DNA of 64,000 bases, from positions 1-64,000 of the IMG/VR virus record IMGVR_UViG_3300041411_000080, one strand, 5' to 3'. The position numbers were made by a program, and so were the translations under genes. The notes under the pieces are model-generated. The model saw only the letters and a program-made list of their open reading frames with translations, did not search any database and had not been told where the DNA came from. How positions within the stretch are numbered: position 1 is the stretch's first letter; the number at the start of each line of letters is the position of its first letter. Positions 15,672 to 46,599 of the stretch are shown here, piece after piece.

Positions 15672-16031
15672 TTAAGCGCCACCTTCAGGTTCAGGCGGTA
15701 CAACAGCAGCAGGTTTGAACGATACGAACAGAACCTTATCAGCAGGACCAGTAGAAATACCGATACCTTCAGCAGCAGGACCATATTGGTTCTCTACCTT
15801 AACGTCACTCCAACCACCAGCGGTGATCGATGCCTTGAGAGCAGTGATACCAGGAGCGGTCAGTTCCTTACCTTTGTAGGTACGGATGACAGTATGATCA
15901 GTTACGCTGGTATTCTCGAGGAATGCCAGAGTAGCCGCAGTTTGCAGGTGAGCGGTAATGTCAGCTTCAAAAGGTGCGATCTCAGCAGCGCTTACGGCTA
16001 CTTTCAGATCGGCAAGACTTGGGATTGCCAT
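15672..16031 (-). CDS. hypothetical protein (119 aa), possible paralogue of 55531..55905
   Basis: MAIP start and ..GGWSDVKV motif. Confidence 0.75.
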   Translation of the reverse strand: MAIPSLADLKVAVSAAEIAPFEADITAHLQTAATLAFLENTSVTDHTVIRTYKGKELTAPGITALKASITAGGWSDVKVENQYGPAAEGIGISTGPADKVLFVSFKPAAVVPPEPEGGA

Positions 16032-16555: not shown

Positions 16556-16773
16556 ACGCCGTACCCCTTAGATACAAAGAAACCGGTACTCGAGATGATA
16601 GTGATAATACCTGACCATTGCCAGAATTTAACCATCTTCGACCAGTCCGGTAGATTTGCCCCGAATGCAAATGCAATGATACCTAGTAGTTGAAACATTG
16701 ACGTAAACGAAAATGCTACTAGGCTTAAGGCCATCAATGCAAAGAATGTTACTGTTAACATTGAATTCCTCAT
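16552..16773 (-). CDS. small multi-TM membrane protein (73 aa)
   Basis: almost wholly hydrophobic. Confidence 0.75.
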   Translation of the reverse strand: MRNSMLTVTFFALMALSLVAFSFTSMFQLLGIIAFAFGANLPDWSKMVKFWQWSGIITIISSTGFFVSKGYGV

Positions 16774-16775
16774 AA

Positions 16776-16797
16776 TGCCCTCCGGTTAAGGAGGGCA
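16776..16797 (-). terminator. hairpin, probable terminator
   Basis: TGCCCTCC-ggttaa-GGAGGGCA on the plus strand; short U tract on the minus strand. Confidence 0.55.
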
Positions 16798-16804
16798 CCT
16801 TATG

Positions 16805-16984
16805 TTACTTGTAACCCAACTGCACCAGTTCACGATGGAGACGTTTAGCCACCCATGCGCGTTCTACTTGATGAGCGAGAACTTTGTTGCGCTTATTACT
16901 CGACAGGTACGCACTGTAGGGACGATCGCGATCCCAGAGATCTTTGCCACGCGAGTAATAACAGGTACGATAAGATTTTGCCAT
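16805..16984 (-). CDS. 59-aa basic Arg/Lys-rich peptide (start MAKSYR)
   Basis: GGAGG SD before ATG 16984. Confidence 0.7.
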   Translation of the reverse strand: MAKSYRTCYYSRGKDLWDRDRPYSAYLSSNKRNKVLAHQVERAWVAKRLHRELVQLGYK

Positions 16985-17048
16985 GGTACATAACCTCCAC
17001 AGGTTTACGTTAATAAACCGTGGCCACAGCTGAAAGTAAACAGGCATC

Positions 17049-17348
17049 TTAGCTACTCACTGTATTCCAATATTGTTCAGCCAGATTATCGACCGTTTCA
17101 GTATATGAAACTTTCAACAGTTGAACGTCTGGACCAACATGTCCGGGTGGTGGTACCAGATCCGTCTCAGTGTAGGTGATATCCATGAATCGCTCAACTA
17201 CCCCTAAGGCTCGAGCGATTGCCATTTCCATCATTTCTATTTCATCAGTATCCCCGCAGACTTCATTGATGACAGCTTCGGGGATCTTCCTAAGTTCACA
17301 CAATACAACTTGAACCATGCTGGGTTCAGGTACGTAAGTGTCGTCCAT
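17049..17348 (-). CDS. acidic protein, C-terminal-tag family (...QYWNTVSS)
   Basis: TAATG coupling; shared C-terminal motif. Confidence 0.8.
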   Translation of the reverse strand: MDDTYVPEPSMVQVVLCELRKIPEAVINEVCGDTDEIEMMEMAIARALGVVERFMDITYTETDLVPPPGHVGPDVQLLKVSYTETVDNLAEQYWNTVSS

Positions 17349-17677
17349 TAAGAACTCACTTGATCAAAGTAGGACTGCGCCAGATTCGCCTTGAGGCGGA
17401 TATCCACATGAACTTCTCCAGGGACTTCGGTCTTTTCGACGGAAGCTACGAAGCCGAGGAAGTTATCTTGAACTTCAGTCAGCGCGCTGCTCAAGGCATG
17501 ATCGATTGCTTTAGCAGCCGAACCTACCAGCAGGTCATGACCATCCAGACATTTGTCTTTAGCCAAATCACGCAGTGTATCCTTAAAAACCTCGATCGAG
17601 TCGGTACGAATCTTTACGAAGGTTTCGATTGGGTCAGTACCTTCAGTGATGATCTTTGGTTCAGTTGTTTGTTCCAT
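17348..17677 (-). CDS. acidic protein, C-terminal-tag family (...SYFDQVSS)
   Basis: TAATG coupling; shared C-terminal motif. Confidence 0.8.
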   Translation of the reverse strand: MEQTTEPKIITEGTDPIETFVKIRTDSIEVFKDTLRDLAKDKCLDGHDLLVGSAAKAIDHALSSALTEVQDNFLGFVASVEKTEVPGEVHVDIRLKANLAQSYFDQVSS

Positions 17678-17970
17678 TAAGAAGCCACCTCTTCGAAGTA
17701 CAGTGTAGACAGACCAGTAGAAATGCTCAGTTCAACCGAGACTTCTTCACCTTCGGAATCAGTAGCACTACCCGTAACCAGATCCGTATAACGTTCTTCG
17801 ACTACATCCAGAACCGCACCGACCAATTGATCAACACCTTTCTTAACTACGTCTTCTGGACTTTCAACACCATTGGCCATAGCCTGATGGAAGTCTTCGG
17901 ACATGAAGTAGTCCACCGCTTCGTTACGTTTCTCTTTGATTGCCGATACAAAATTGTCAACTTCGCTCAT
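17677..17970 (-). CDS. acidic protein, C-terminal-tag family (...LYFEEVAS)
   Basis: AGGTGA SD; shared C-terminal motif. Confidence 0.8.
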   Translation of the reverse strand: MSEVDNFVSAIKEKRNEAVDYFMSEDFHQAMANGVESPEDVVKKGVDQLVGAVLDVVEERYTDLVTGSATDSEGEEVSVELSISTGLSTLYFEEVAS

Positions 17971-17998
17971 ATGTCACCTGTCTATTAAAATGGTTTGG

Positions 17999-18094
17999 TT
18001 AGATGGAAACGGAATTCCACAACTCATAGAGTGGTTCAGTAATTGCTTCGGTAGGAGCTGTACGAGTAACCAGCTTGTCATCGAAGGCGTGCAT
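17999..18094 (-). CDS. 31-aa micropeptide, C-terminal-tag family (...ELWNSVSI)
   Basis: MHAFDDKLVTRTAPTEAITEPLYELWNSVSI; GAGGT SD. Confidence 0.65.
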   Translation of the reverse strand: MHAFDDKLVTRTAPTEAITEPLYELWNSVSI

Positions 18095-18101
18095 GTATAC
18101 C

Positions 18102-18350
18102 TCAATAGGAAAGCTTCAGGGGTTCCCAGAGCAACGCTAGCGGTGCATTAGGGTCAACGTACCATTGCCATACCCAGAAGCTACAGAACGCAATCAGGAA
18201 CACCCCAATGGCAATCTTACCATAGCGGTTAGATATACCGAAGATAGTTTCGATCTTGTACTTCTGTAGACGTGGGTGTTCGCCGAGGATCAACCAGAAA
18301 CCAGCAATGGTCCAACATACCACCAAGAAGAAAGTAAAGATATCCATCAA
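18102..18350 (-). CDS. two-TM membrane protein (82 aa)
   Basis: two hydrophobic helices. Confidence 0.75.
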   Translation of the reverse strand: MMDIFTFFLVVCWTIAGFWLILGEHPRLQKYKIETIFGISNRYGKIAIGVFLIAFCSFWVWQWYVDPNAPLALLWEPLKLSY

Positions 18351-18892
18351 GCTACGTCCTTCACGGTGGTAACACCAGCTTTAACCATCTGACGATACAT
18401 TTTCATCTTAGCTGCTTTCTGTTCTGCATTTCGGGCCTTGATCCAATCACCATACTTCGCAAGGGATTCTCTGGATGGGGTAACGAACTGGCCCATCTCC
18501 AGAATGAAGTTGCGGGTAAAGAAATTCCGCCAGCCAGCGAAACCACGGTAAGCGCCTAGTACCGAGTTACCGGACCAGTTCTCACGGATCGCATTAACCA
18601 GCAACGTACCCACACCTTTACCACGCCAGTGCGGTAATACGTAAAACTCACAGGTCTTCTCTTTAGGGTAGTAGAATGCATACCCCACCAGAGCACCAGT
18701 TTCAGTGTTAACTTTGGCGATATGGAAAGGTGTTTCGAACTTACCCTTTTGGTCGAAGTATTCCAGTTCAACCATCAAAATCGATTTAACGAAACCCAGT
18801 GGTTCATAGACACTCATGAGGTCAAGCAGACGAAGGAATCTGTTCTTCTCCTTGGTGTCAGTATGTTCGATCAGTGTAGTAATGTAGGTCAT
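18347..18892 (-). CDS. GNAT-family N-acetyltransferase
   Basis: acetyl-CoA motif A FYVLPHWRGKGVGTLLVNAI. Confidence 0.75.
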   Translation of the reverse strand: MTYITTLIEHTDTKEKNRFLRLLDLMSVYEPLGFVKSILMVELEYFDQKGKFETPFHIAKVNTETGALVGYAFYYPKEKTCEFYVLPHWRGKGVGTLLVNAIRENWSGNSVLGAYRGFAGWRNFFTRNFILEMGQFVTPSRESLAKYGDWIKARNAEQKAAKMKMYRQMVKAGVTTVKDVA

Positions 18893-19266
18893 GAATTTAC
18901 ATCATCCCAAAGAGTGGTTACGTAGTCGTTGAATGTGTGGGCGGCTCCATGAGCAATCAGTCCCGGAGCGTTCTCAGAACACAGGCCAAGGAAGTTCTCA
19001 TGTAGATTGACGTGGGCAGCCATGTAACTGCAAGCAAAGTTCACACCTTCGCCAATGCATGCTTTAACTACTTTCAGTTGCTGAGGTGTCATATCCGTGT
19101 AAGCTTGAATTAGCTTATTCATCCCATAGTCAACACCATCGACCATGCTTTTATGGATGCTTTCACGAGTCTGGGTTTCAAGTAATTCCATTGCTAGACT
19201 TACTTCAGTGGACACATGAATCAACTCGTCGATTTCTTGCCCACTCGGAACCTGTGCCGTTTTCAT
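18889..19266 (-). CDS. acidic protein, C-terminal-tag family (...TLWDDVNS)
   Basis: ORF tiles; shared C-terminal motif. Confidence 0.8.
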   Translation of the reverse strand: MKTAQVPSGQEIDELIHVSTEVSLAMELLETQTRESIHKSMVDGVDYGMNKLIQAYTDMTPQQLKVVKACIGEGVNFACSYMAAHVNLHENFLGLCSENAPGLIAHGAAHTFNDYVTTLWDDVNS

Positions 19267-19269
19267 AGG

Positions 19270-19611
19270 TTACACCCGTTCGACCTTACGGAACTTGATC
19301 AGGGCACTACCAATGACTACACCTGTTTCCATGTTAGTCAGTACGCCATAGGTTTGAAATGGTGGTTCACCGCTGCCATCGATCTTAGACCGTGCATCGA
19401 ATACACCAGTAGCTTCGACTGGATCAACGTATAGGAAATGTCGACCTTCGTACTCTTTAGGGATTTGTTCCCCAAGCGGCCAGACTGTAAACAACAGCTT
19501 GTTTTCGTACCAACCTTTAAAAGACAGTTGGACTACAGTGCCATAAGCTGGAAGATGGTCAGCCTCCAGTATAGGGAACTCAGCTGTATAACGTTCGTGT
19601 GGTTTAAACAT
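19270..19611 (-). CDS. hypothetical protein (113 aa)
   Basis: ORF tiles; AAGGA SD. Confidence 0.75.
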   Translation of the reverse strand: MFKPHERYTAEFPILEADHLPAYGTVVQLSFKGWYENKLLFTVWPLGEQIPKEYEGRHFLYVDPVEATGVFDARSKIDGSGEPPFQTYGVLTNMETGVVIGSALIKFRKVERV

Positions 19612-19848
19612 TTAATCTTCCTTAGGGATTAGCAGCTTCCAGCTATCGAGGTCTTTTACCTCACGCCAGTTCCACGAATCCTTTACAACGGTTAGGATTT
19701 TCTGAGCAGCTTCTTCGATAGTGGTTTCAACTGGACGCCACCATCCAGTACTACAACCTGCTGTGCCTGAACTGGTTTCATTTTGTTGTTGGTAAGCGAT
19801 ACTCAAGTTGAGTACATTATTTTCGGATACCCACCATTCGGCTCTCAT
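19612..19848 (-). CDS. hypothetical protein (78 aa)
   Basis: ATGA coupling. Confidence 0.75.
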   Translation of the reverse strand: MRAEWWVSENNVLNLSIAYQQQNETSSGTAGCSTGWWRPVETTIEEAAQKILTVVKDSWNWREVKDLDSWKLLIPKED

Positions 19849-20099
19849 GTACTTACCTCAGACCAATAGCGATTACATTCGATAGCAATCCCCTTACACC
19901 AGTGTGGATCACCATTAGATTCACATACACCAATAGCCTTCAACTCGAAGAGACCTTCAATAGCATCGGTCGTACGTAAGATTGCAGCTTCGATCAGCTG
20001 GGTCGGTGTAAGCTTGGGGCTATCTTTTATTAGCTCGTCACGAATACTATCCAGCTCGCCAAACGCCGTGTGTAACACATCTTGCTCTAGGCTAGCCAT
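19845..20099 (-). CDS. acidic protein, C-terminal-tag family (...RYWSEVST)
   Basis: TAATG coupling; shared C-terminal motif. Confidence 0.8.
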   Translation of the reverse strand: MASLEQDVLHTAFGELDSIRDELIKDSPKLTPTQLIEAAILRTTDAIEGLFELKAIGVCESNGDPHWCKGIAIECNRYWSEVST

Positions 20100-20455
20100 T
20101 ATGAATTCACCAATGCCCAGTAAGCCTCAAGTCCTTGGCCGAAGTCAGCGAACTCGCGGTGATCGATGTAGTTAGCTCCGGCTGCGATTGCCTCTTCTTT
20201 ATCCTCAGGTGGATCATACGCAATCAGGTTAACAGCAGGGAAGTGTTCACTGTTGCCATCCAGAATACCGAGAACACCACCGATGATCTTATTGGCTACT
20301 GCGGTGTCACGCGCAGCTGAATCCTCATAGGCATCCAGATAAGGATCTTGCAGAGCTTCGTCACGCATCTCTTTCAATGCGTATACGAATTGGTCACGTG
20401 CTTCACCCACAGTTACTGGACGAGGTTTGCCATTACCTTCAAAATAAATACTCAT
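20099..20455 (-). CDS. acidic protein, C-terminal-tag family (...AYWALVNS)
   Basis: ATGA coupling; GVLGILDGNSEHFPAVNL core. Confidence 0.8.
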   Translation of the reverse strand: MSIYFEGNGKPRPVTVGEARDQFVYALKEMRDEALQDPYLDAYEDSAARDTAVANKIIGGVLGILDGNSEHFPAVNLIAYDPPEDKEEAIAAGANYIDHREFADFGQGLEAYWALVNS

Positions 20456-28597: not shown

Positions 28598-28834
28598 TTA
28601 TTTAGGTACGTTTTCTTTATCAAGCCAGTCTGAGATAATTTCATCTGTAACTTCTCGACCTTGCCTGCTGAATAAGGCTTTTACATCGGCAACTGATGCG
28701 AGGATAGGCTCCATACCACTACGGAACTTATCAAGCTGCTTACACTCGTAGTAATACACCCGCTCATCAAGTGTAAGTGGAACACCCTCAGCGATCTTGG
28801 TATCGATCTTAACACGAGTTTCAGTTTTCATCAA
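28598..28834 (-). CDS. hypothetical protein (78 aa)
   Basis: coupled to the thyA stop. Confidence 0.75.
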   Translation of the reverse strand: MMKTETRVKIDTKIAEGVPLTLDERVYYYECKQLDKFRSGMEPILASVADVKALFSRQGREVTDEIISDWLDKENVPK

Positions 28835-30276
28835 ACGGCTACCTTACCGGCGATGTGTGGATGTGATTCATACCCGAGGATAACGAAATCGTCCGGTGTA
28901 ATCTCACGCTGGTCTTTACCATACACTTCGGGCTTGAACAGGATGCGGGGTGTATCGTACGGTTCACGAGTCAGCTGAAGATCAGTTTGTTCCTGATGAT
29001 TCGAATAAATGTGGCAGTCCCCGCCAGTCCAGATGAACTCTTCCGCAGCCATGTTGAACTGGTTAGCGAGTTGGTGAGTCATCAACGAATAGAAGGTGAT
29101 GTTGAACGGCTTACCGAGGAAGGTATCCACCGAACGCTGATACAGATGGCAGCTCAGACCACGGCGTGGTGCCTGTACATTATCAAGCCAACTATGCATG
29201 AACTCTTCAGTGACATCACTTGGCTTATTCAAGGCACACAGACTACTCTTGAAATTTTCCACTGAACGAATCGGTGGCAACCCGCGAGCTGGATCAAATG
29301 CTGCTTGAGCATCTAGTCGGTCTTGATATGCATTGAGGCGTTCTTCCAGATTCAGTTCACGAGTCCAGAACTGGAAGAAGCAGTGGCATGGCGGGAGAGC
29401 CTGATCTTCTACCAGACGTGGGTCCCATGCACAGACGATAATCCGACGGGAGTCAGGACCATTAGCCAGCTGATCCATTACATCTTGCAGTTGGTCAATA
29501 CGACGACGGATAACACATTGGTCAGTCGCAGTATCTGTACCCGGAATGTCTACAACGAAAGTGAAACCACGTTTCTCGTAATCCACCCATTCCAACTTAG
29601 GGATGATACGGACATCATCGATGTTCCGCCACGTCTTACCGTACACTGCACCCAGATCACCACCGATCAAACGTTGTGGTTCGGATTTGAAGAACAGTCG
29701 ATGTAGACGCTTCATGCACTCAAAACCGAAGTTGGTCGCATGGGTAGCATCAGGTGACTCGACTTCTTTCCATTTAACAAGATTAACCTTAACGATCTTC
29801 TTAACGTCTTCACGATCTTTGATGTTAGGGTACTGTGCCCAGAATGCTTCAACTCCTTCAGGACTCAGTTCCGCGAGGAAGCTCTGGATATCCTCAATAG
29901 CGATATCGTTCTCGACGTCGAAGGTAGTGAACACAAGTACCCACTTACCGTCAATGTGCTTATCGATCTTGATGGTAAGATCGTATTCATCCAATGGTGC
30001 GTATTCAGCGGTTTCTGGTTTAACCCATTCGTTCCAGATACGTACACCATTACGGATCAGGTAGTCTACACGAGTATCACCAGAAGACATCCAGATCAGT
30101 TCATGGATTACCGAGTGAAGGTGAATCTTCTTGGTGGTTACCACAGGCAACTTATTGTTACGCAGATCGTAACGTTCGTGTTGACCAAACATGGACTGTG
30201 TGCCAGTACCAGTACGGTCACCTTTAAAGATGCCGAGGTCTTTGATCATTTGAAGCGATTGAAGATACTGATGCAT
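28831..30276 (-). CDS. thyA: thymidylate synthase with three insertions
   Basis: VTTKK, IWNEW, LGAVYG, SRRII..AW, ALPPCH, YQRSVD.FLG.PFN, GDCHIY.NH. Confidence 0.95.
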   Translation of the reverse strand: MHQYLQSLQMIKDLGIFKGDRTGTGTQSMFGQHERYDLRNNKLPVVTTKKIHLHSVIHELIWMSSGDTRVDYLIRNGVRIWNEWVKPETAEYAPLDEYDLTIKIDKHIDGKWVLVFTTFDVENDIAIEDIQSFLAELSPEGVEAFWAQYPNIKDREDVKKIVKVNLVKWKEVESPDATHATNFGFECMKRLHRLFFKSEPQRLIGGDLGAVYGKTWRNIDDVRIIPKLEWVDYEKRGFTFVVDIPGTDTATDQCVIRRRIDQLQDVMDQLANGPDSRRIIVCAWDPRLVEDQALPPCHCFFQFWTRELNLEERLNAYQDRLDAQAAFDPARGLPPIRSVENFKSSLCALNKPSDVTEEFMHSWLDNVQAPRRGLSCHLYQRSVDTFLGKPFNITFYSLMTHQLANQFNMAAEEFIWTGGDCHIYSNHQEQTDLQLTREPYDTPRILFKPEVYGKDQREITPDDFVILGYESHPHIAGKVAV

Positions 30277-30725: not shown

Positions 30726-31898
30726 TTATGCTTCCGCCATGGTTGGAACTTTCTTTGGTTTACCGGTGAGCACTTTCAGCCAAGAAGGACGAGCCTTACG
30801 CTTACCCGGCCAAGTGCATTTGGTTACATCCAGATCAGGGAAGAAGCAGCTATTGCCATTAGCCCCATCGGAACGAAGCTCTGGTTGGGTAGACTTCATG
30901 GCATTCGCTATAACGAACTTATCGGTAGGAGCGAGCTTCTCAAGAGCTTCACGACGAGCCAACTTTTCACGATGTACGGTATCGATCCAAGGCATACTGG
31001 CTTGAGGCTTCTGCTTACCGCCTTCGATTACGGTCCAATTACGATCACGCATTTTAGTTTCCAATGTGTCATGGCCGATCATGCGACCCCATTCACCTTG
31101 TGGTTTAAGGTCAACCTTACCGGGAAAGTTAAGGATGGTAGCGTCACCACTGAAAGTAGCATTGCCCTTATCACCGAAATCAACTTTGAAGACGTTGGTA
31201 TCTTCTTTGATTGGACTAGCCAGTATAACCAACTTACCTTCAGAGTCAACTTTGAAACCATCACATTGAATAGACATACCTTGTTTACGCCATGATTCAT
31301 TCAATGCGTCGATTTCTGCTTGGGTTGGAATTGATACCTCAACCGTAGTACCATCAGTCTTAACTACTGATACAGTCGACTCAGGCGTAGCTACGTCAAT
31401 CGCCGCCAACTCTCGGGCTTTGATATCGGCACGGAGAGCAGCCAACTCTTCATCGGTGATCTCATCAATGCTCTCAACATGACCGTTGTTGAAAGTAATG
31501 CGATGTTTACCATTATCCAGTACTTCGACACCAACTGGTTCGATGCCATCTGGAAGATCCAATTCAACATCACCGTAATCTTCGAAGTAAGGGAAGATGT
31601 TAGGGATACCTGTGGTAGGATCTTCAGCAGCATATACTGCGGTGTAAGGAATCTCCAGTTGGATCTCCTTACCTTGACGACGGGACCAGAAACTGAACGA
31701 CTCATCACCGGTAGTGAAGTGACGGGTAGCATTCGCTGAGATGTTCAAACAAATCATCCCAGAGACGGGGTTCATATCCTCGAGGTAGTCCTTTGGATCG
31801 AACTGTGCAGCCTGTACGTAGATGTGCCATTTGGCAGCATTCTCGGTAACGAACCAATCCAGCAATGCTTGAAACGTAACTTTAGCCATGGGTATCAT
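30726..31898 (-). CDS. sspB: SspB-like ClpXP adaptor with a long acidic linker
   Basis: ALLDWF...LNISANAT...FWSRRQG..QLEIPYTAVYA; C-terminal RPSWLKV resembles the XB ClpX-binding tail. Confidence 0.7.
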   Translation of the reverse strand: MIPMAKVTFQALLDWFVTENAAKWHIYVQAAQFDPKDYLEDMNPVSGMICLNISANATRHFTTGDESFSFWSRRQGKEIQLEIPYTAVYAAEDPTTGIPNIFPYFEDYGDVELDLPDGIEPVGVEVLDNGKHRITFNNGHVESIDEITDEELAALRADIKARELAAIDVATPESTVSVVKTDGTTVEVSIPTQAEIDALNESWRKQGMSIQCDGFKVDSEGKLVILASPIKEDTNVFKVDFGDKGNATFSGDATILNFPGKVDLKPQGEWGRMIGHDTLETKMRDRNWTVIEGGKQKPQASMPWIDTVHREKLARREALEKLAPTDKFVIANAMKSTQPELRSDGANGNSCFFPDLDVTKCTWPGKRKARPSWLKVLTGKPKKVPTMAEA

Positions 31899-46074: not shown

Positions 46075-46599
46075 CTAGTAGGTAGGATCTTGCAGAGCCC
46101 CAGCTTTCTCTTGCGAAACCATATCCCAATAAGCCTGACAGATGTTGGTACATGGACGAGTAGCTTCCACTAACTTGATCTTATCGCCCTCTTTAGCCAT
46201 GGCCGGTACAGCGTAGTCACTGATAACGAACCGCGAGTCATGGATACCTGTACCTTCCAGTTTACAGATGGCATTGCCAACGATCAGATCCAAGGTCTTC
46301 ATGAACTGTTCAGGATTAACTGGAATGTTACCATGCTCATCGTATTTAATACGACTGACACATTCGCCTGGCTTTGGTAGGTCATGAATAGTGCTGCCAT
46401 TCAATGCGTTTTCGATATCGCAACGCATATCGAAGAAGACCCCGGCTGGACCACCTTTACGGATGCGGTAATCTTCCGTAAGGTCACGTTTTCTCAACTC
46501 TGGATCAACGAGTTGGAATCCCGACTGGTCACCAACCAAGGCCAATATTTCTTCCAATGGGTAGTCTTGGGGAAAGACCGGTTTAGAGGTATCGATCAT
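46075..46599 (-). CDS. hypothetical protein (174 aa)
   Basis: TAATG coupling. Confidence 0.8.
   Translation of the reverse strand: MIDTSKPVFPQDYPLEEILALVGDQSGFQLVDPELRKRDLTEDYRIRKGGPAGVFFDMRCDIENALNGSTIHDLPKPGECVSRIKYDEHGNIPVNPEQFMKTLDLIVGNAICKLEGTGIHDSRFVISDYAVPAMAKEGDKIKLVEATRPCTNICQAYWDMVSQEKAGALQDPTY

What the first reader, a model, noticed from the sequence alone, without database searches (positions are those of the whole stretch)
17049..20455. Seven clustered, mostly acidic proteins share a C-terminal [YL]-[FW]-x-x-V-x-[STI]-stop tag
Seen: C-termini YWNTVSS, YFDQVSS, YFEEVAS, LWNSVSI (31-aa micro-ORF), LWDDVNS, YWSEVST and YWALVNS, in otherwise barely similar sequences within 3.4 kb. 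Overlapping SD/start codons could explain the Val and terminal Ser/Thr in some members, but not the aromatic at -6. 17049 and 17999 have no convincingly coupled downstream start yet keep the motif. Inference: a common docking or targeting tag (shared hub, protease or compartment import), or a family of acidic inhibitors/DNA mimics with an invariant binding tail. No named system matches this to my knowledge.
Basis: partly seen in the sequence, partly recalled or inferred. Interest (0 to 1): 0.85.

Follow-up and report, generated by a model that had tools for sequence, protein, structure and literature searches.

The report
Shared C-terminal helix tag, jumbo phage
A nucleus-forming Pseudomonas jumbo phage ends about nine of its small acidic proteins with the same short C-terminal helix; most are diverged copies of one gene family, but related phages carry the same tail on unrelated proteins, which suggests a shared docking tag whose partner is unknown.

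Summary
The strict motif occurs 7 times among 1,325 ORFs, all in this cluster, against about 0.18 expected.

The window is the first 64 kb of a chimallivirus (phiKZ-like phage) related to 201phi2-1, Phabio and PhiPA3.

- **Descent explains most of it.** A, B, C, F, G and the 31-aa remnant D are diverged tandem paralogues of one small acidic helical family (partly PHROG 11061). With the tail cut off, the bodies still cross-match. E shares only the tail.
- **Descent does not explain all of it.** The complete 201phi2-1 genome has the same tail on proteins far from the cluster whose bodies show no detectable similarity to the family.
  - One is gp283 (= phiKZ gp186 = PhiPA3 gp222).
  - Another is gp308. 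Its body occurs in 44 non-chimallivirus contigs without a tail. Only the three chimallivirus copies carry a 27-aa extension ending in the tail.
- **The constraint acts on the protein.** The stop falls exactly two residues after V/I in 49 of 58 members, with or without an overlapping downstream start, and V alternates with I.

Best reading (confidence about 0.5): a portable amphipathic docking helix shared by early, cytoplasmic, non-virion proteins, with an unknown partner. Published GFP fusions of three PhiPA3 members are cytoplasmic, which argues against a nuclear-import signal.

The parts
20099..20455 (-). Member G, 118 aa, pI 4.26. Orthologue of phiKZ gp258, 201phi2-1 gp369 and PhiPA3 gp306. 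Tail ...GLEAYWALVNS.
   Evidence: ORF. PHROG 11061 at E = 9e-41. Orthologues in 63 Pseudomonas phage records. AF2 model: tail forms helix 109-117, pLDDT about 82.
19845..20099 (-). Member F, 84 aa, pI 4.48. Orthologue of 201phi2-1 gp370 and PhiPA3 gp307. Tail ...NRYWSEVST.
   Evidence: The body-only HMM of this group also hits group I members. Some orthologues carry the motif 7-10 residues before the stop.
18889..19266 (-). Member E, 125 aa, pI 4.74. Orthologue of 201phi2-1 gp372 and Phabio gp370. Tail ...TTLWDDVNS. Linked to the others only by the last 16 residues or so.
   Evidence: AF2 model with pLDDT 90: three-helix bundle H10-55, H61-93, H101-123, with the tail at the end of H3. hhalign against group I aligns only the last 16 columns. 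In 201phi2-1, Viktualia and L014 the protein stops at the V.
17999..18094 (-). Member D, a 31-aa tail-only micro-ORF ending ...YELWNSVSI. It is a deletion remnant of a roughly 106-aa family gene. It keeps an ATG preceded by GAGGT.
   Evidence: The 106-aa homologue in the related genome (L010 10789-11109) ends ...AITEPLYELWNSVSN. The group V body-only HMM hits it at 7.9e-12. Sequence context.
17677..17970 (-). Member C, 97 aa, pI 4.05. Orthologue of 201phi2-1 gp376 and PhiPA3 gp313. Tail ...LSTLYFEEVAS.
   Evidence: PHROG 11061 at E = 2.2e-14 over residues 4-96. Group I alignment A2. PhiPA3 gp313 was detected by proximity labelling and its GFP fusion is diffuse cytoplasmic.
17348..17677 (-). 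Member B, 109 aa, pI 4.61. Group I paralogue. Tail ...LAQSYFDQVSS.
17049..17348 (-). Member A, 99 aa, pI 4.05. Group I paralogue (201phi2-1 gp377 type). Tail ...LAEQYWNTVSS.
46075..46599 (-). Eighth, outlying member, 174 aa. Homologue of 201phi2-1 gp330. Motif ...AYWDMVSQ followed by 11 more residues. Its central segment resembles that of group II.
   Evidence: tblastn of gp330 against the window: 30% identity, E = 1.7e-12. Translation. 201phi2-1 gp330 itself ends ...AYWDLVNG.

Best explanation
The shared C-terminus is a conserved amphipathic helix of about 11 residues. Its consensus is L/I-x-x-x-[Y/L/F]-[F/W]-[D/E/N]-x-[V/I]-[S/N]-[N/S/T]-stop.

**What is shown**
- Pseudomonas chimalliviruses place this helix at the end of a set of small, acidic proteins, roughly 7-12 per genome in the 201phi2-1/Phabio/PhiPA3/PS119XW group. 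None of them was flagged as a virion protein in the 201phi2-1 annotation.
- In this window most carriers are tandem paralogues of one fast-evolving helical family, so they inherited the tail.
- The same tail also ends unrelated proteins elsewhere in related genomes. In one of those families it was clearly added as an extension.
- The constraint acts on the protein, not on the DNA.

**What is inferred**
The tail is a portable docking or recognition helix. Through it, these proteins would contact one common partner in the infected cell's cytoplasm. Each variable body would supply its own activity or target.

**What is not known**
The partner, and whether binding serves recruitment, regulation or turnover.
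For: **Real and clustered**
- 7 of 1,325 ORFs match, against 0.18 expected.

**Paralogy**
- G and C both match PHROG 11061.
- With the tail cut off, hhalign gives I-II 80%, I-III 74% and I-V 74%, against under 1% for control families.
- Body-only HMMs cross-hit between groups I, II, III and V. Every cross-group hit among these groups carries a tail; the tail-less hits are phiKZ gp257, PhiPA3 gp309 and a degenerate orthologue.

**Portability**
- In the whole 201phi2-1 genome the consensus tail ends 7 of 6,245 ORFs, all of them annotated genes. Three (gp283, gp308, gp330) lie 22-48 kb from the cluster.
- The family HMMs do not hit the bodies of those three.
- hhalign between the gp283 family, the gp308 family and group I gives under 2%.
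- The gp308 body occurs in 90 phage records and 47 IMG/VR loci. In 44 of the 47 loci it ends at ...ETGELP. Only the 3 chimallivirus copies have the 25-27-aa extension ending FFSEVSN, FFDEINT or FFDDINT.
- The gp283/phiKZ gp186 family keeps the tail in six of the seven genera compared (201phi2-1, Phabio, PS119XW, Noxifer, phiKZ, PhiPA3) and in the window's own genome, where it ends ...LFAEVES. The Psa21 copy is degenerate.

**Protein-level constraint**
- 49 of 58 members stop exactly 2 residues after V/I. Only 32 of 58 have an overlapping downstream ATG.
- All four Val codons and Ile codons are used.
- Positions -2 and -1 are S/N in 56 of 59 tails and N/S/T in 53 of 59.

**Helical**
- The tail lies in a helix in both AF2 models.

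**Expression and importance**
- PhiPA3 gp222, gp308 and gp313 are among the top 25 RecA-miniTurboID hits. That is 3 of about 8 carriers, hypergeometric p about 0.01.
- ASO knock-down of the early transcript phiKZ186 strongly reduced plaque counts (10.1101/2024.07.31.605949).

**Not virion proteins**
- None is flagged by the 201phi2-1 virion mass spectrometry, unlike the neighbour gp382.
Against: - No partner is identified and no binding has been tested.
- Both AF2 monomer models place the tail in a confident helix. In E it is part of a three-helix bundle. Its hydrophobic face may therefore be buried in the protein's own core and unavailable for docking.
- S/N/T at the last two positions are also ordinary helix-capping residues.
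- The stop position is not absolute. Three members end at the V, and others run on for 1-21 residues.
- Bodies that look unrelated to sequence methods could still share a fold.
- The proximity-labelling enrichment rests on small numbers.
Confidence: 0.5

Rival explanations
1. Purely structural element. The tail is the last, core-closing helix of each protein. Its L/aromatic/V face packs on the conserved small-residue central helix (...IGGVL.., ..AIGGVLD.., ..CIGEGV..). Paralogy explains the cluster. The few outside cases arose by recombination with family members or by convergence. There is no common partner.
For: - Most carriers are homologous beyond the tail.
- The central helix and the tail are the two segments conserved across all groups.
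- The tail has high pLDDT in the monomer models, 82 and 93-96.
- S/N/T at the end are common helix caps.
- The stop position varies in groups III and IV.
Against: - The gp308-type body evidently occurs without the tail in 44 unrelated phage contigs. The tail is there an added 27-aa extension, which a purely structural role does not explain.
- The gp283/gp186 body shows no similarity to the family, yet it keeps the same seven residues and the same stop position in most of the genera compared.
- The polar positions of the tail are also restricted.
Confidence: 0.25
2. Turnover tag. The tail is a degron read by a protease adaptor, so that a cohort of early proteins is removed, or protected, together. 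One candidate adaptor is the phage's own SspB-like protein (window 30726-31898), which could hand proteins to host ClpXP.
For: - The position is C-terminal with a nearly fixed distance to the stop.
- The carriers form a cohort, and at least one is an early gene.
- The phage encodes a protein with a weak SspB substrate-binding-domain match (Pfam PF04386, E = 1.4e-4, 22.3 bits, below the 27-bit cut-off). The 201phi2-1 homologue is annotated the same way.
Against: - The SspB match is below Pfam's threshold.
- The tail does not resemble ssrA. It has no ...LAA end; it ends in S/N/T.
- There are no stability data.
- Three carriers were detectable 45 min after infection (and the paper's methods).
- Co-occurrence could not be tested, because tblastn finds the SspB-like gene in only 7 records.
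Confidence: 0.1
3. Address label for the phage nucleus. The tail docks its carriers on the chimallin shell or licenses their import. Published GFP fusions missed this because a C-terminal tag masks the tail.
For: - Untagged PhiPA3 gp222 and gp308 were biotinylated by both ChmA- and RecA-miniTurboID, and gp313 by RecA-miniTurboID (log2 fold change 3.3). All values were normalised to a cytoplasmic miniTurboID-GFP control.
- The side of the GFP tag in the localisation screen is not stated in the text I could read. A later paper from the same groups used C-terminal sfGFP.
Against: - GFP fusions of all three are cytoplasmic, either diffuse or in puncta.
- Established nuclear cargo is imported with C-terminal sfGFP and has no linear signal.
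- The chimallin and PhuZ termini do not resemble the tail.
- Known nuclear proteins such as RecA and the RNA polymerases are not among the carriers found in the 201phi2-1 scan.
Confidence: 0.1
4. By-product of gene overlap. The last codons are constrained by the Shine-Dalgarno sequence and start codon of the next gene.
For: 32 of 58 members have a stop overlapping the next ATG. GAGGT or GGTGA occurs within some tails.
Against: - 26 of 58 have no overlap, with gaps up to 100 nt, yet keep the tail and the stop position.
- The V codons are GTA 17, GTG 14, GTT 12 and GTC 6, and Ile (ATC/ATT) replaces Val in 8.
- The aromatic pair and the leucine lie upstream of any SD site.
- No other coupled gene in 64 kb has the motif.
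Confidence: 0.01

Closest known systems
Encapsulation peptides of bacterial microcompartments and cargo-loading peptides of encapsulins
   Same: A short terminal amphipathic helix (hydrophobic positions i, i+3/4, i+7) found on otherwise unrelated proteins. It is joined to the body by a poorly conserved, often Gly-rich linker and is portable between bodies. The phage also builds a protein-shelled compartment.
   Different: No shell binding has been shown. Three carriers localise to the cytoplasm as GFP fusions. The sequence differs from the known peptides. Most carriers here are also paralogues of each other.
C-terminal hub-binding tails such as the SSB C-terminal tip, or ssrA/SspB-ClpX recognition tags
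   Same: A conserved short C-terminal peptide at a fixed distance from the free end, read by a common partner, in an acidic context.
   Different: SSB tails are disordered and end in ...DDDIPF. ssrA ends in ...LAA. This tail is helical and ends in S/N-N/S/T. No partner is known.
PHROG 11061, an uncharacterised phage protein family that includes phiKZ gp258
   Same: G (E = 9e-41) and C (E = 2e-14) are members over their full length.
   Different: The PHROG has no assigned function. It does not capture A, B, E, F or the unrelated tail carriers (the gp186 and gp308 types). To my knowledge the shared tail has not been described, and the paper searches found nothing.
Small acidic phage anti-host proteins and DNA mimics (Ocr, ArdA and similar)
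   Same: Small, helical, strongly acidic, early, and present as multiple fast-evolving copies.
   Different: No sequence or fold match. DNA mimicry is untested. Acidity alone is weak evidence.

Membership tests
PHROG 11061 (uncharacterised phage family) | Significant full-length match to the family profile | tested here: met
   G: E = 9e-41, residues 3-118. C: E = 2.2e-14, residues 4-96. A, B, D, E and F have no match at E of 1 or better.
Single paralogous family (common descent of all seven) | Similarity beyond the shared tail | tested here: inconclusive
   Met for A, B, C, F and G, and for D through its intact homologue. With the tail removed, hhalign gives 74-80% against under 1% for controls, and body-only HMMs cross-hit. 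Not met for E, where only the last 16 columns align.
Compartment-targeting terminal peptide (BMC encapsulation peptide or encapsulin cargo-loading peptide type) | Short amphipathic terminal helix present on unrelated bodies | tested here: met
   The tail is helical in two AF2 models. It sits on three bodies with no detectable homology, and one of them acquired it as an extension.
Compartment-targeting terminal peptide (BMC encapsulation peptide or encapsulin cargo-loading peptide type) | Carriers localise to the compartment or shell | tested here: not met
   From the literature: GFP fusions of PhiPA3 gp222 and gp313 are diffuse cytoplasmic, and gp308 forms cytoplasmic puncta (PMC10643120, Suppl. 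Table 3). Caveat: the side of the tag is unknown, and the native proteins were labelled by ChmA and RecA baits.
Chimallivirus nuclear-import cargo (PicA/Imp pathway) | Nuclear localisation during infection, with recognition through a folded surface | tested here: not met
   Three homologues are cytoplasmic. The pathway is reported to have no terminal signal.
ssrA/SspB-ClpXP type degron | C-terminal ...LAA-like ClpX determinant plus an upstream SspB-binding segment | tested here: not met
   Tails end in [S/N][N/S/T], and none ends in LAA. A phage SspB-like gene exists, but its Pfam match is below threshold.
Sliding-clamp-binding motif (QL[S/D]LF) | Match to the consensus pentapeptide | tested here: not met
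   The tail consensus has no Q-L-x-L-F. The clamp consensus is from my own knowledge.
DNA-mimic proteins (Ocr/ArdA type) | Fold or charge pattern that imitates B-DNA | not testable with these tools
   Acidity is confirmed. Foldseek against the PDB gave no match at E of 0.001 or better for G, and Pfam gave none.
Virion or ejected proteins | Detected in purified virions | tested here: not met
   The 201phi2-1 annotation flags virion proteins found by mass spectrometry. gp283, gp308, gp330 and gp369-378 are not flagged, while the neighbour gp382 is.

The most novel reading that the evidence does not exclude
The tail is the first linear address or recognition signal found in nucleus-forming phages. 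One helix of about 11 residues would define a regulon of about ten early proteins, including the phiKZ gp186 family (where knock-down strongly reduces plaque counts). That helix would recruit them to one phage-built or host hub: the cytoplasmic face of the chimallin shell, the import machinery, or a phage SspB-like adaptor. Published GFP fusions would have missed this if the tag masked the free C-terminus.
Probability: 0.2. Interest if true: 0.85.

Novelty: new variant of a known kind. Interest (0 to 1): 0.6.

Why it matters
- Chimalliviruses sort hundreds of proteins between a protein-shelled nucleus and the cytoplasm, and no linear sorting or recruitment signal is known for them.
- A short, portable, strictly C-terminal helix shared by about ten early acidic proteins gives a concrete handle. 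It defines a testable cohort.
- The cohort includes a gene whose knock-down cripples phiKZ, and three proteins found near the nucleus by proximity labelling.
- A tail peptide could be used directly as bait to find the partner.
- If the tail turns out to be only a structural cap, the result still sorts a block of hypothetical genes into one fast-evolving family.

Tried and rejected
- **Sequence family libraries.** Pfam gave only noise for the seven proteins. PHROGs gave only families of unknown function, plus a weak, probably misnamed 'DNA methyltransferase' PHROG for F.
- **RNA genes.** Rfam and tRNA scans of the window found nothing.
- **Structure searches.** Foldseek against the PDB found nothing for G. 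Against BFVD, G hit only uncharacterised phage proteins and E hit nothing. ESM Atlas look-alikes scored below the noise level.
- **Family range.** An exhaustive profile search of 1.84 billion representatives found only 13, so the helical family is confined to this phage group.
- **Mimicry of phage tails.** The chimallin and PhuZ termini are unlike the tail.
- **Shine-Dalgarno or overlap origin.** Rejected.
- **Co-occurrence with the SspB-like gene.** Not assessable. The gene diverges too fast for tblastn, which found only 7 records.
- **Literature on the genes.** Paper searches for phiKZ gp258/gp257, 201phi2-1 gp369-378 and PhiPA3 gp306-313 gave nothing beyond the two data sets cited.
- **GFP tag side.** I could not find which end was tagged in the PhiPA3 localisation screen.
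- **Promoter and terminator scan.** The cluster showed nothing above shuffled background.

Full report
**1. What the window is**

The region has only patchy DNA similarity to known phages. One 254-bp stretch is 88% identical to Pseudomonas phage Phabio. At the protein level the genes match nucleus-forming jumbo phages of Pseudomonas. The 118-aa protein at 20099-20455 is 56-64% identical to proteins of Viktualia, 201phi2-1, Phabio and PhiPA3, and 38% identical to phiKZ gp258. The window is colinear with the first 64 kb of an uncultivated 320,858-bp viral contig, IMGVR_UViG_3300041411_000080.

**2.

The strict pattern [YL][FW]xxVx[STI]-stop occurs 7 times among 1,325 stop-terminated ORFs of at least 25 aa in six frames. 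All seven lie between 17049 and 20455 on one strand. Composition predicts 0.18 matches, and 2,000 shuffles never exceeded 3. The six full-length proteins are among the most acidic small ORFs of the window.

**3. The tail is not a side effect of gene overlap**

I curated 58 tail-bearing genes from 11 genomes.
- 49 stop exactly two residues after the V/I.
- Only 32 have a stop overlapping the next ATG. The others have gaps of up to 100 nt and keep both the tail and the stop position.
- All four valine codons are used, and isoleucine replaces valine in eight.

The constraint therefore acts on the amino acids. Over 59 tails the consensus is hydrophobic at -11/-10, Y/L/F at -7, F/W at -6, D/E/N at -5, V/I at -3, S/N at -2 and N/S/T at -1. 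The spacing i, i+3/4, i+7 is that of an amphipathic helix. Both AlphaFold models place the tail in a helix.

**4. Most of the cluster is one diverged gene family**

- G and C both match PHROG 11061 over their full length, at E = 9e-41 and 2e-14.
- Clustering with orthologues gives five groups: group I is A, B and C; group II is G; group III is F; group IV is E; group V is absent from the window except for D.
- With the tail removed from every sequence, hhalign still links I-II (80%), I-III (74%) and I-V (74%). Three control families from the same loci score under 1%.
- Tail-less HMMs cross-hit between groups I, II, III and V. Every such cross-group hit carries the tail; the only tail-less hits are phiKZ gp257, PhiPA3 gp309 and one degenerate orthologue.
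- The shared body element is a central helix with small residues (..IGGVL....AIGGVLD..), followed by a variable linker and then the tail.

Three further points:
- D is a remnant. A closely related genome has an intact 106-aa gene ending in almost the same 20 residues, plus a further 77-aa member that the window lacks.
- E is linked only by its last 16 residues or so and by a loosely similar ..CIGEGV.. segment. Its model is a confident three-helix bundle.
- The family is narrow. A profile search of 1.84 billion representative proteins returned 13. Copy number changes quickly: 7 in the window's cluster, 9 in its closest relative, 6-7 in 201phi2-1, Viktualia, Phabio, PhiPA3 and PS119XW, and 1 in phiKZ.

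**5. Descent is not the whole story**

I rebuilt the complete 316,674-bp 201phi2-1 genome from eight fetched pieces and scanned all 6,245 ORFs. The consensus tail ends seven of them, and all seven are annotated genes. Four are in the cluster. Three (gp283, gp308 and gp330) lie 22-48 kb away. About 0.2 matches would be expected by chance.

- **gp330.** It looks like a distant relative of group II. Its window homologue at 46075-46599 carries the motif 11 residues before the stop.
- **gp283 and gp308.** The family HMMs do not match them. Profile-profile comparison gives under 2%.
- **gp308.** This is the clearest case. Residues 9-105 belong to a domain found in 90 phage records, including FelixO1-like phages and Pseudomonas phage MPK9. 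Of 47 IMG/VR loci encoding that domain, 44 end within a few residues of ...ETGELP. Only the three chimallivirus copies continue for 25-27 residues and finish FFSEVSN, FFDEINT or FFDDINT. Here the tail was added to a foreign body.
- **gp283.** It is the orthologue of phiKZ gp186 and PhiPA3 gp222 and is present in 68 Pseudomonas chimallivirus records. The tail ends the protein in 201phi2-1, Phabio, PS119XW, Noxifer, phiKZ and PhiPA3, and is degenerate in Psa21. The window's own genome encodes a copy 12 kb beyond the window that ends ...LFAEVES.

**6. What experiments by others say**

- Enustun et al. 2023 (PMC10643120) ran proximity labelling in PhiPA3. gp222, gp313 and gp308 are among the top 25 proteins labelled by nuclear RecA-miniTurboID. 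gp222 and gp308 were also labelled by ChmA-miniTurboID. Values were normalised to a cytoplasmic control. Three of about eight carriers among 25 of about 378 proteins gives p of about 0.01.
- In the same study, GFP fusions of gp222 and gp313 were diffuse in the cytoplasm and gp308 formed cytoplasmic puncta. I could not establish which end carried the tag.
- Gerovac et al. (bioRxiv 10.1101/2024.07.31.605949) report that antisense knock-down of 'the early expressed transcript phiKZ186' strongly reduced plaque counts.
- Morgan et al. (bioRxiv 10.1101/2024.03.21.585822) find no terminal import signal in nuclear cargo. [quoted passage not shown]
- None of the 201phi2-1 carriers is flagged as a virion protein, unlike neighbouring genes.

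**7. Interpretation**

Shown:
- The tail is a real, helical C-terminal element constrained at the protein level.
- Within the cluster it is largely inherited.
- It also sits on unrelated bodies, once as an evident addition.
- At least one carrier (the phiKZ gp186 transcript) is expressed early, and three PhiPA3 homologues appear cytoplasmic as GFP fusions. The carriers are not virion proteins in the 201phi2-1 annotation, and at least one matters for infection.

Inferred, with confidence of about 0.5:
- The tail is a portable docking or recognition helix for one common partner.

The main rival (about 0.25) is that it is only the core-closing helix of each protein. The confident packing in the monomer models supports that rival. 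The gp308 add-on and the restricted polar positions argue against it.

More specific versions are a turnover tag and a shell or nucleus address label, each at about 0.1. The turnover tag might be read by the phage's sub-threshold SspB-like protein at 30726-31898. A pure overlap artefact is excluded.

**8. Comparison with known systems**

- The tail works most like the terminal amphipathic peptides that target cargo to bacterial microcompartments or encapsulins, or like C-terminal hub-binding tails.
- It fails the localisation criterion for a compartment tag on present data.
- It does not match the ssrA, clamp-binding or SSB tail consensus.
- Two members belong to PHROG 11061, which has no known function.
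- I found no description of the shared tail in the literature searched.

**9. Verdict**

The feature is real and not ordinary. It is partly explained by paralogy, with good evidence that the tail is a transferable module. The mechanism is unproven, and the decisive experiments are simple.

Noticed in passing
window 16768-17021 (minus-strand ORF 16805-17047; hairpin 16776-16797): This 254-bp stretch is 88% identical at the DNA level to Phabio, while the flanking genes share no megablast-detectable DNA similarity. It covers a small basic ORF. The conserved part begins around ...MAKSYRTCYY and has homologues in Phabio gp377 and L010 12328-12510. A GC-rich hairpin sits just downstream. This could reflect recent exchange or an unusually constrained small gene or RNA. 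Rfam and tRNA scans were negative.
   Followed up: partly
window 30726-31898 (-): A 390-aa protein whose N-terminus gives a sub-threshold match to the SspB substrate-binding domain (PF04386, E = 1.4e-4, 22.3 bits against a cut-off of 27). The 201phi2-1 homologue gp347 is annotated 'SspB domain-containing' and described as similar to phiKZ gp232. A phage-encoded adaptor-like protein is a candidate reader of a peptide tag. This is a lead only.
   Followed up: partly
window 18347-18892 (-): A GNAT acetyltransferase (Pfam Acetyltransf_7, Acetyltransf_1 and Acetyltransf_10) sits inside the cluster, and its start overlaps the stop of member E. A GNAT gene sits among the family genes in 201phi2-1 (two copies, gp373 and gp374), Viktualia, Phabio and PS119XW too. 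Any functional link to the family is unknown.
   Followed up: partly
window 17971-18101, compared with L010 10587-11137: Relative to its closest relative, the window has lost about 540 bp. The lost stretch held a 77-aa family member and most of a 106-aa member. What remains is the 31-aa tail-only ORF D, directly behind the small membrane-protein gene 18102-18350 and preceded by GAGGT. Whether D is expressed as a free tail peptide is unknown.
   Followed up: partly
L001 5273-5959 (phiKZ gp257) and L002 9188-9664 (201phi2-1 gp378): phiKZ gp257 (228 aa) is a paralogue of gp258. Its tail has decayed and been extended (...IADDISRIMR). 201phi2-1 gp378 (158 aa) contains two copies of the family's central-helix segment, which suggests a partial internal duplication.
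   Followed up: partly
window 28831-30276 (-): This thymidylate synthase homologue is unusually long at 481 aa. The Pfam match is split into two stretches, which suggests a large insertion in the enzyme.
   Followed up: no
window 15672-16031 (-): Homologue of 201phi2-1 gp382, a virion protein by mass spectrometry. It has a Pro/Gly/Glu-rich C-terminus and is followed by a strong terminator-like hairpin at 15664-15645. This probably marks the end of the long minus-strand operon that contains the cluster.
   Followed up: no
BFVD hits of the G model: The G model matches uncharacterised proteins of Klebsiella phage Eowyn, Acinetobacter phage AB1 (gp38), Serratia phage Yaphecito and Ralstonia phage RP12, with Foldseek E-values of 3e-4 to 3e-3. 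The body fold may therefore reach beyond Pseudomonas phages. I did not check whether those proteins carry the tail.
   Followed up: no
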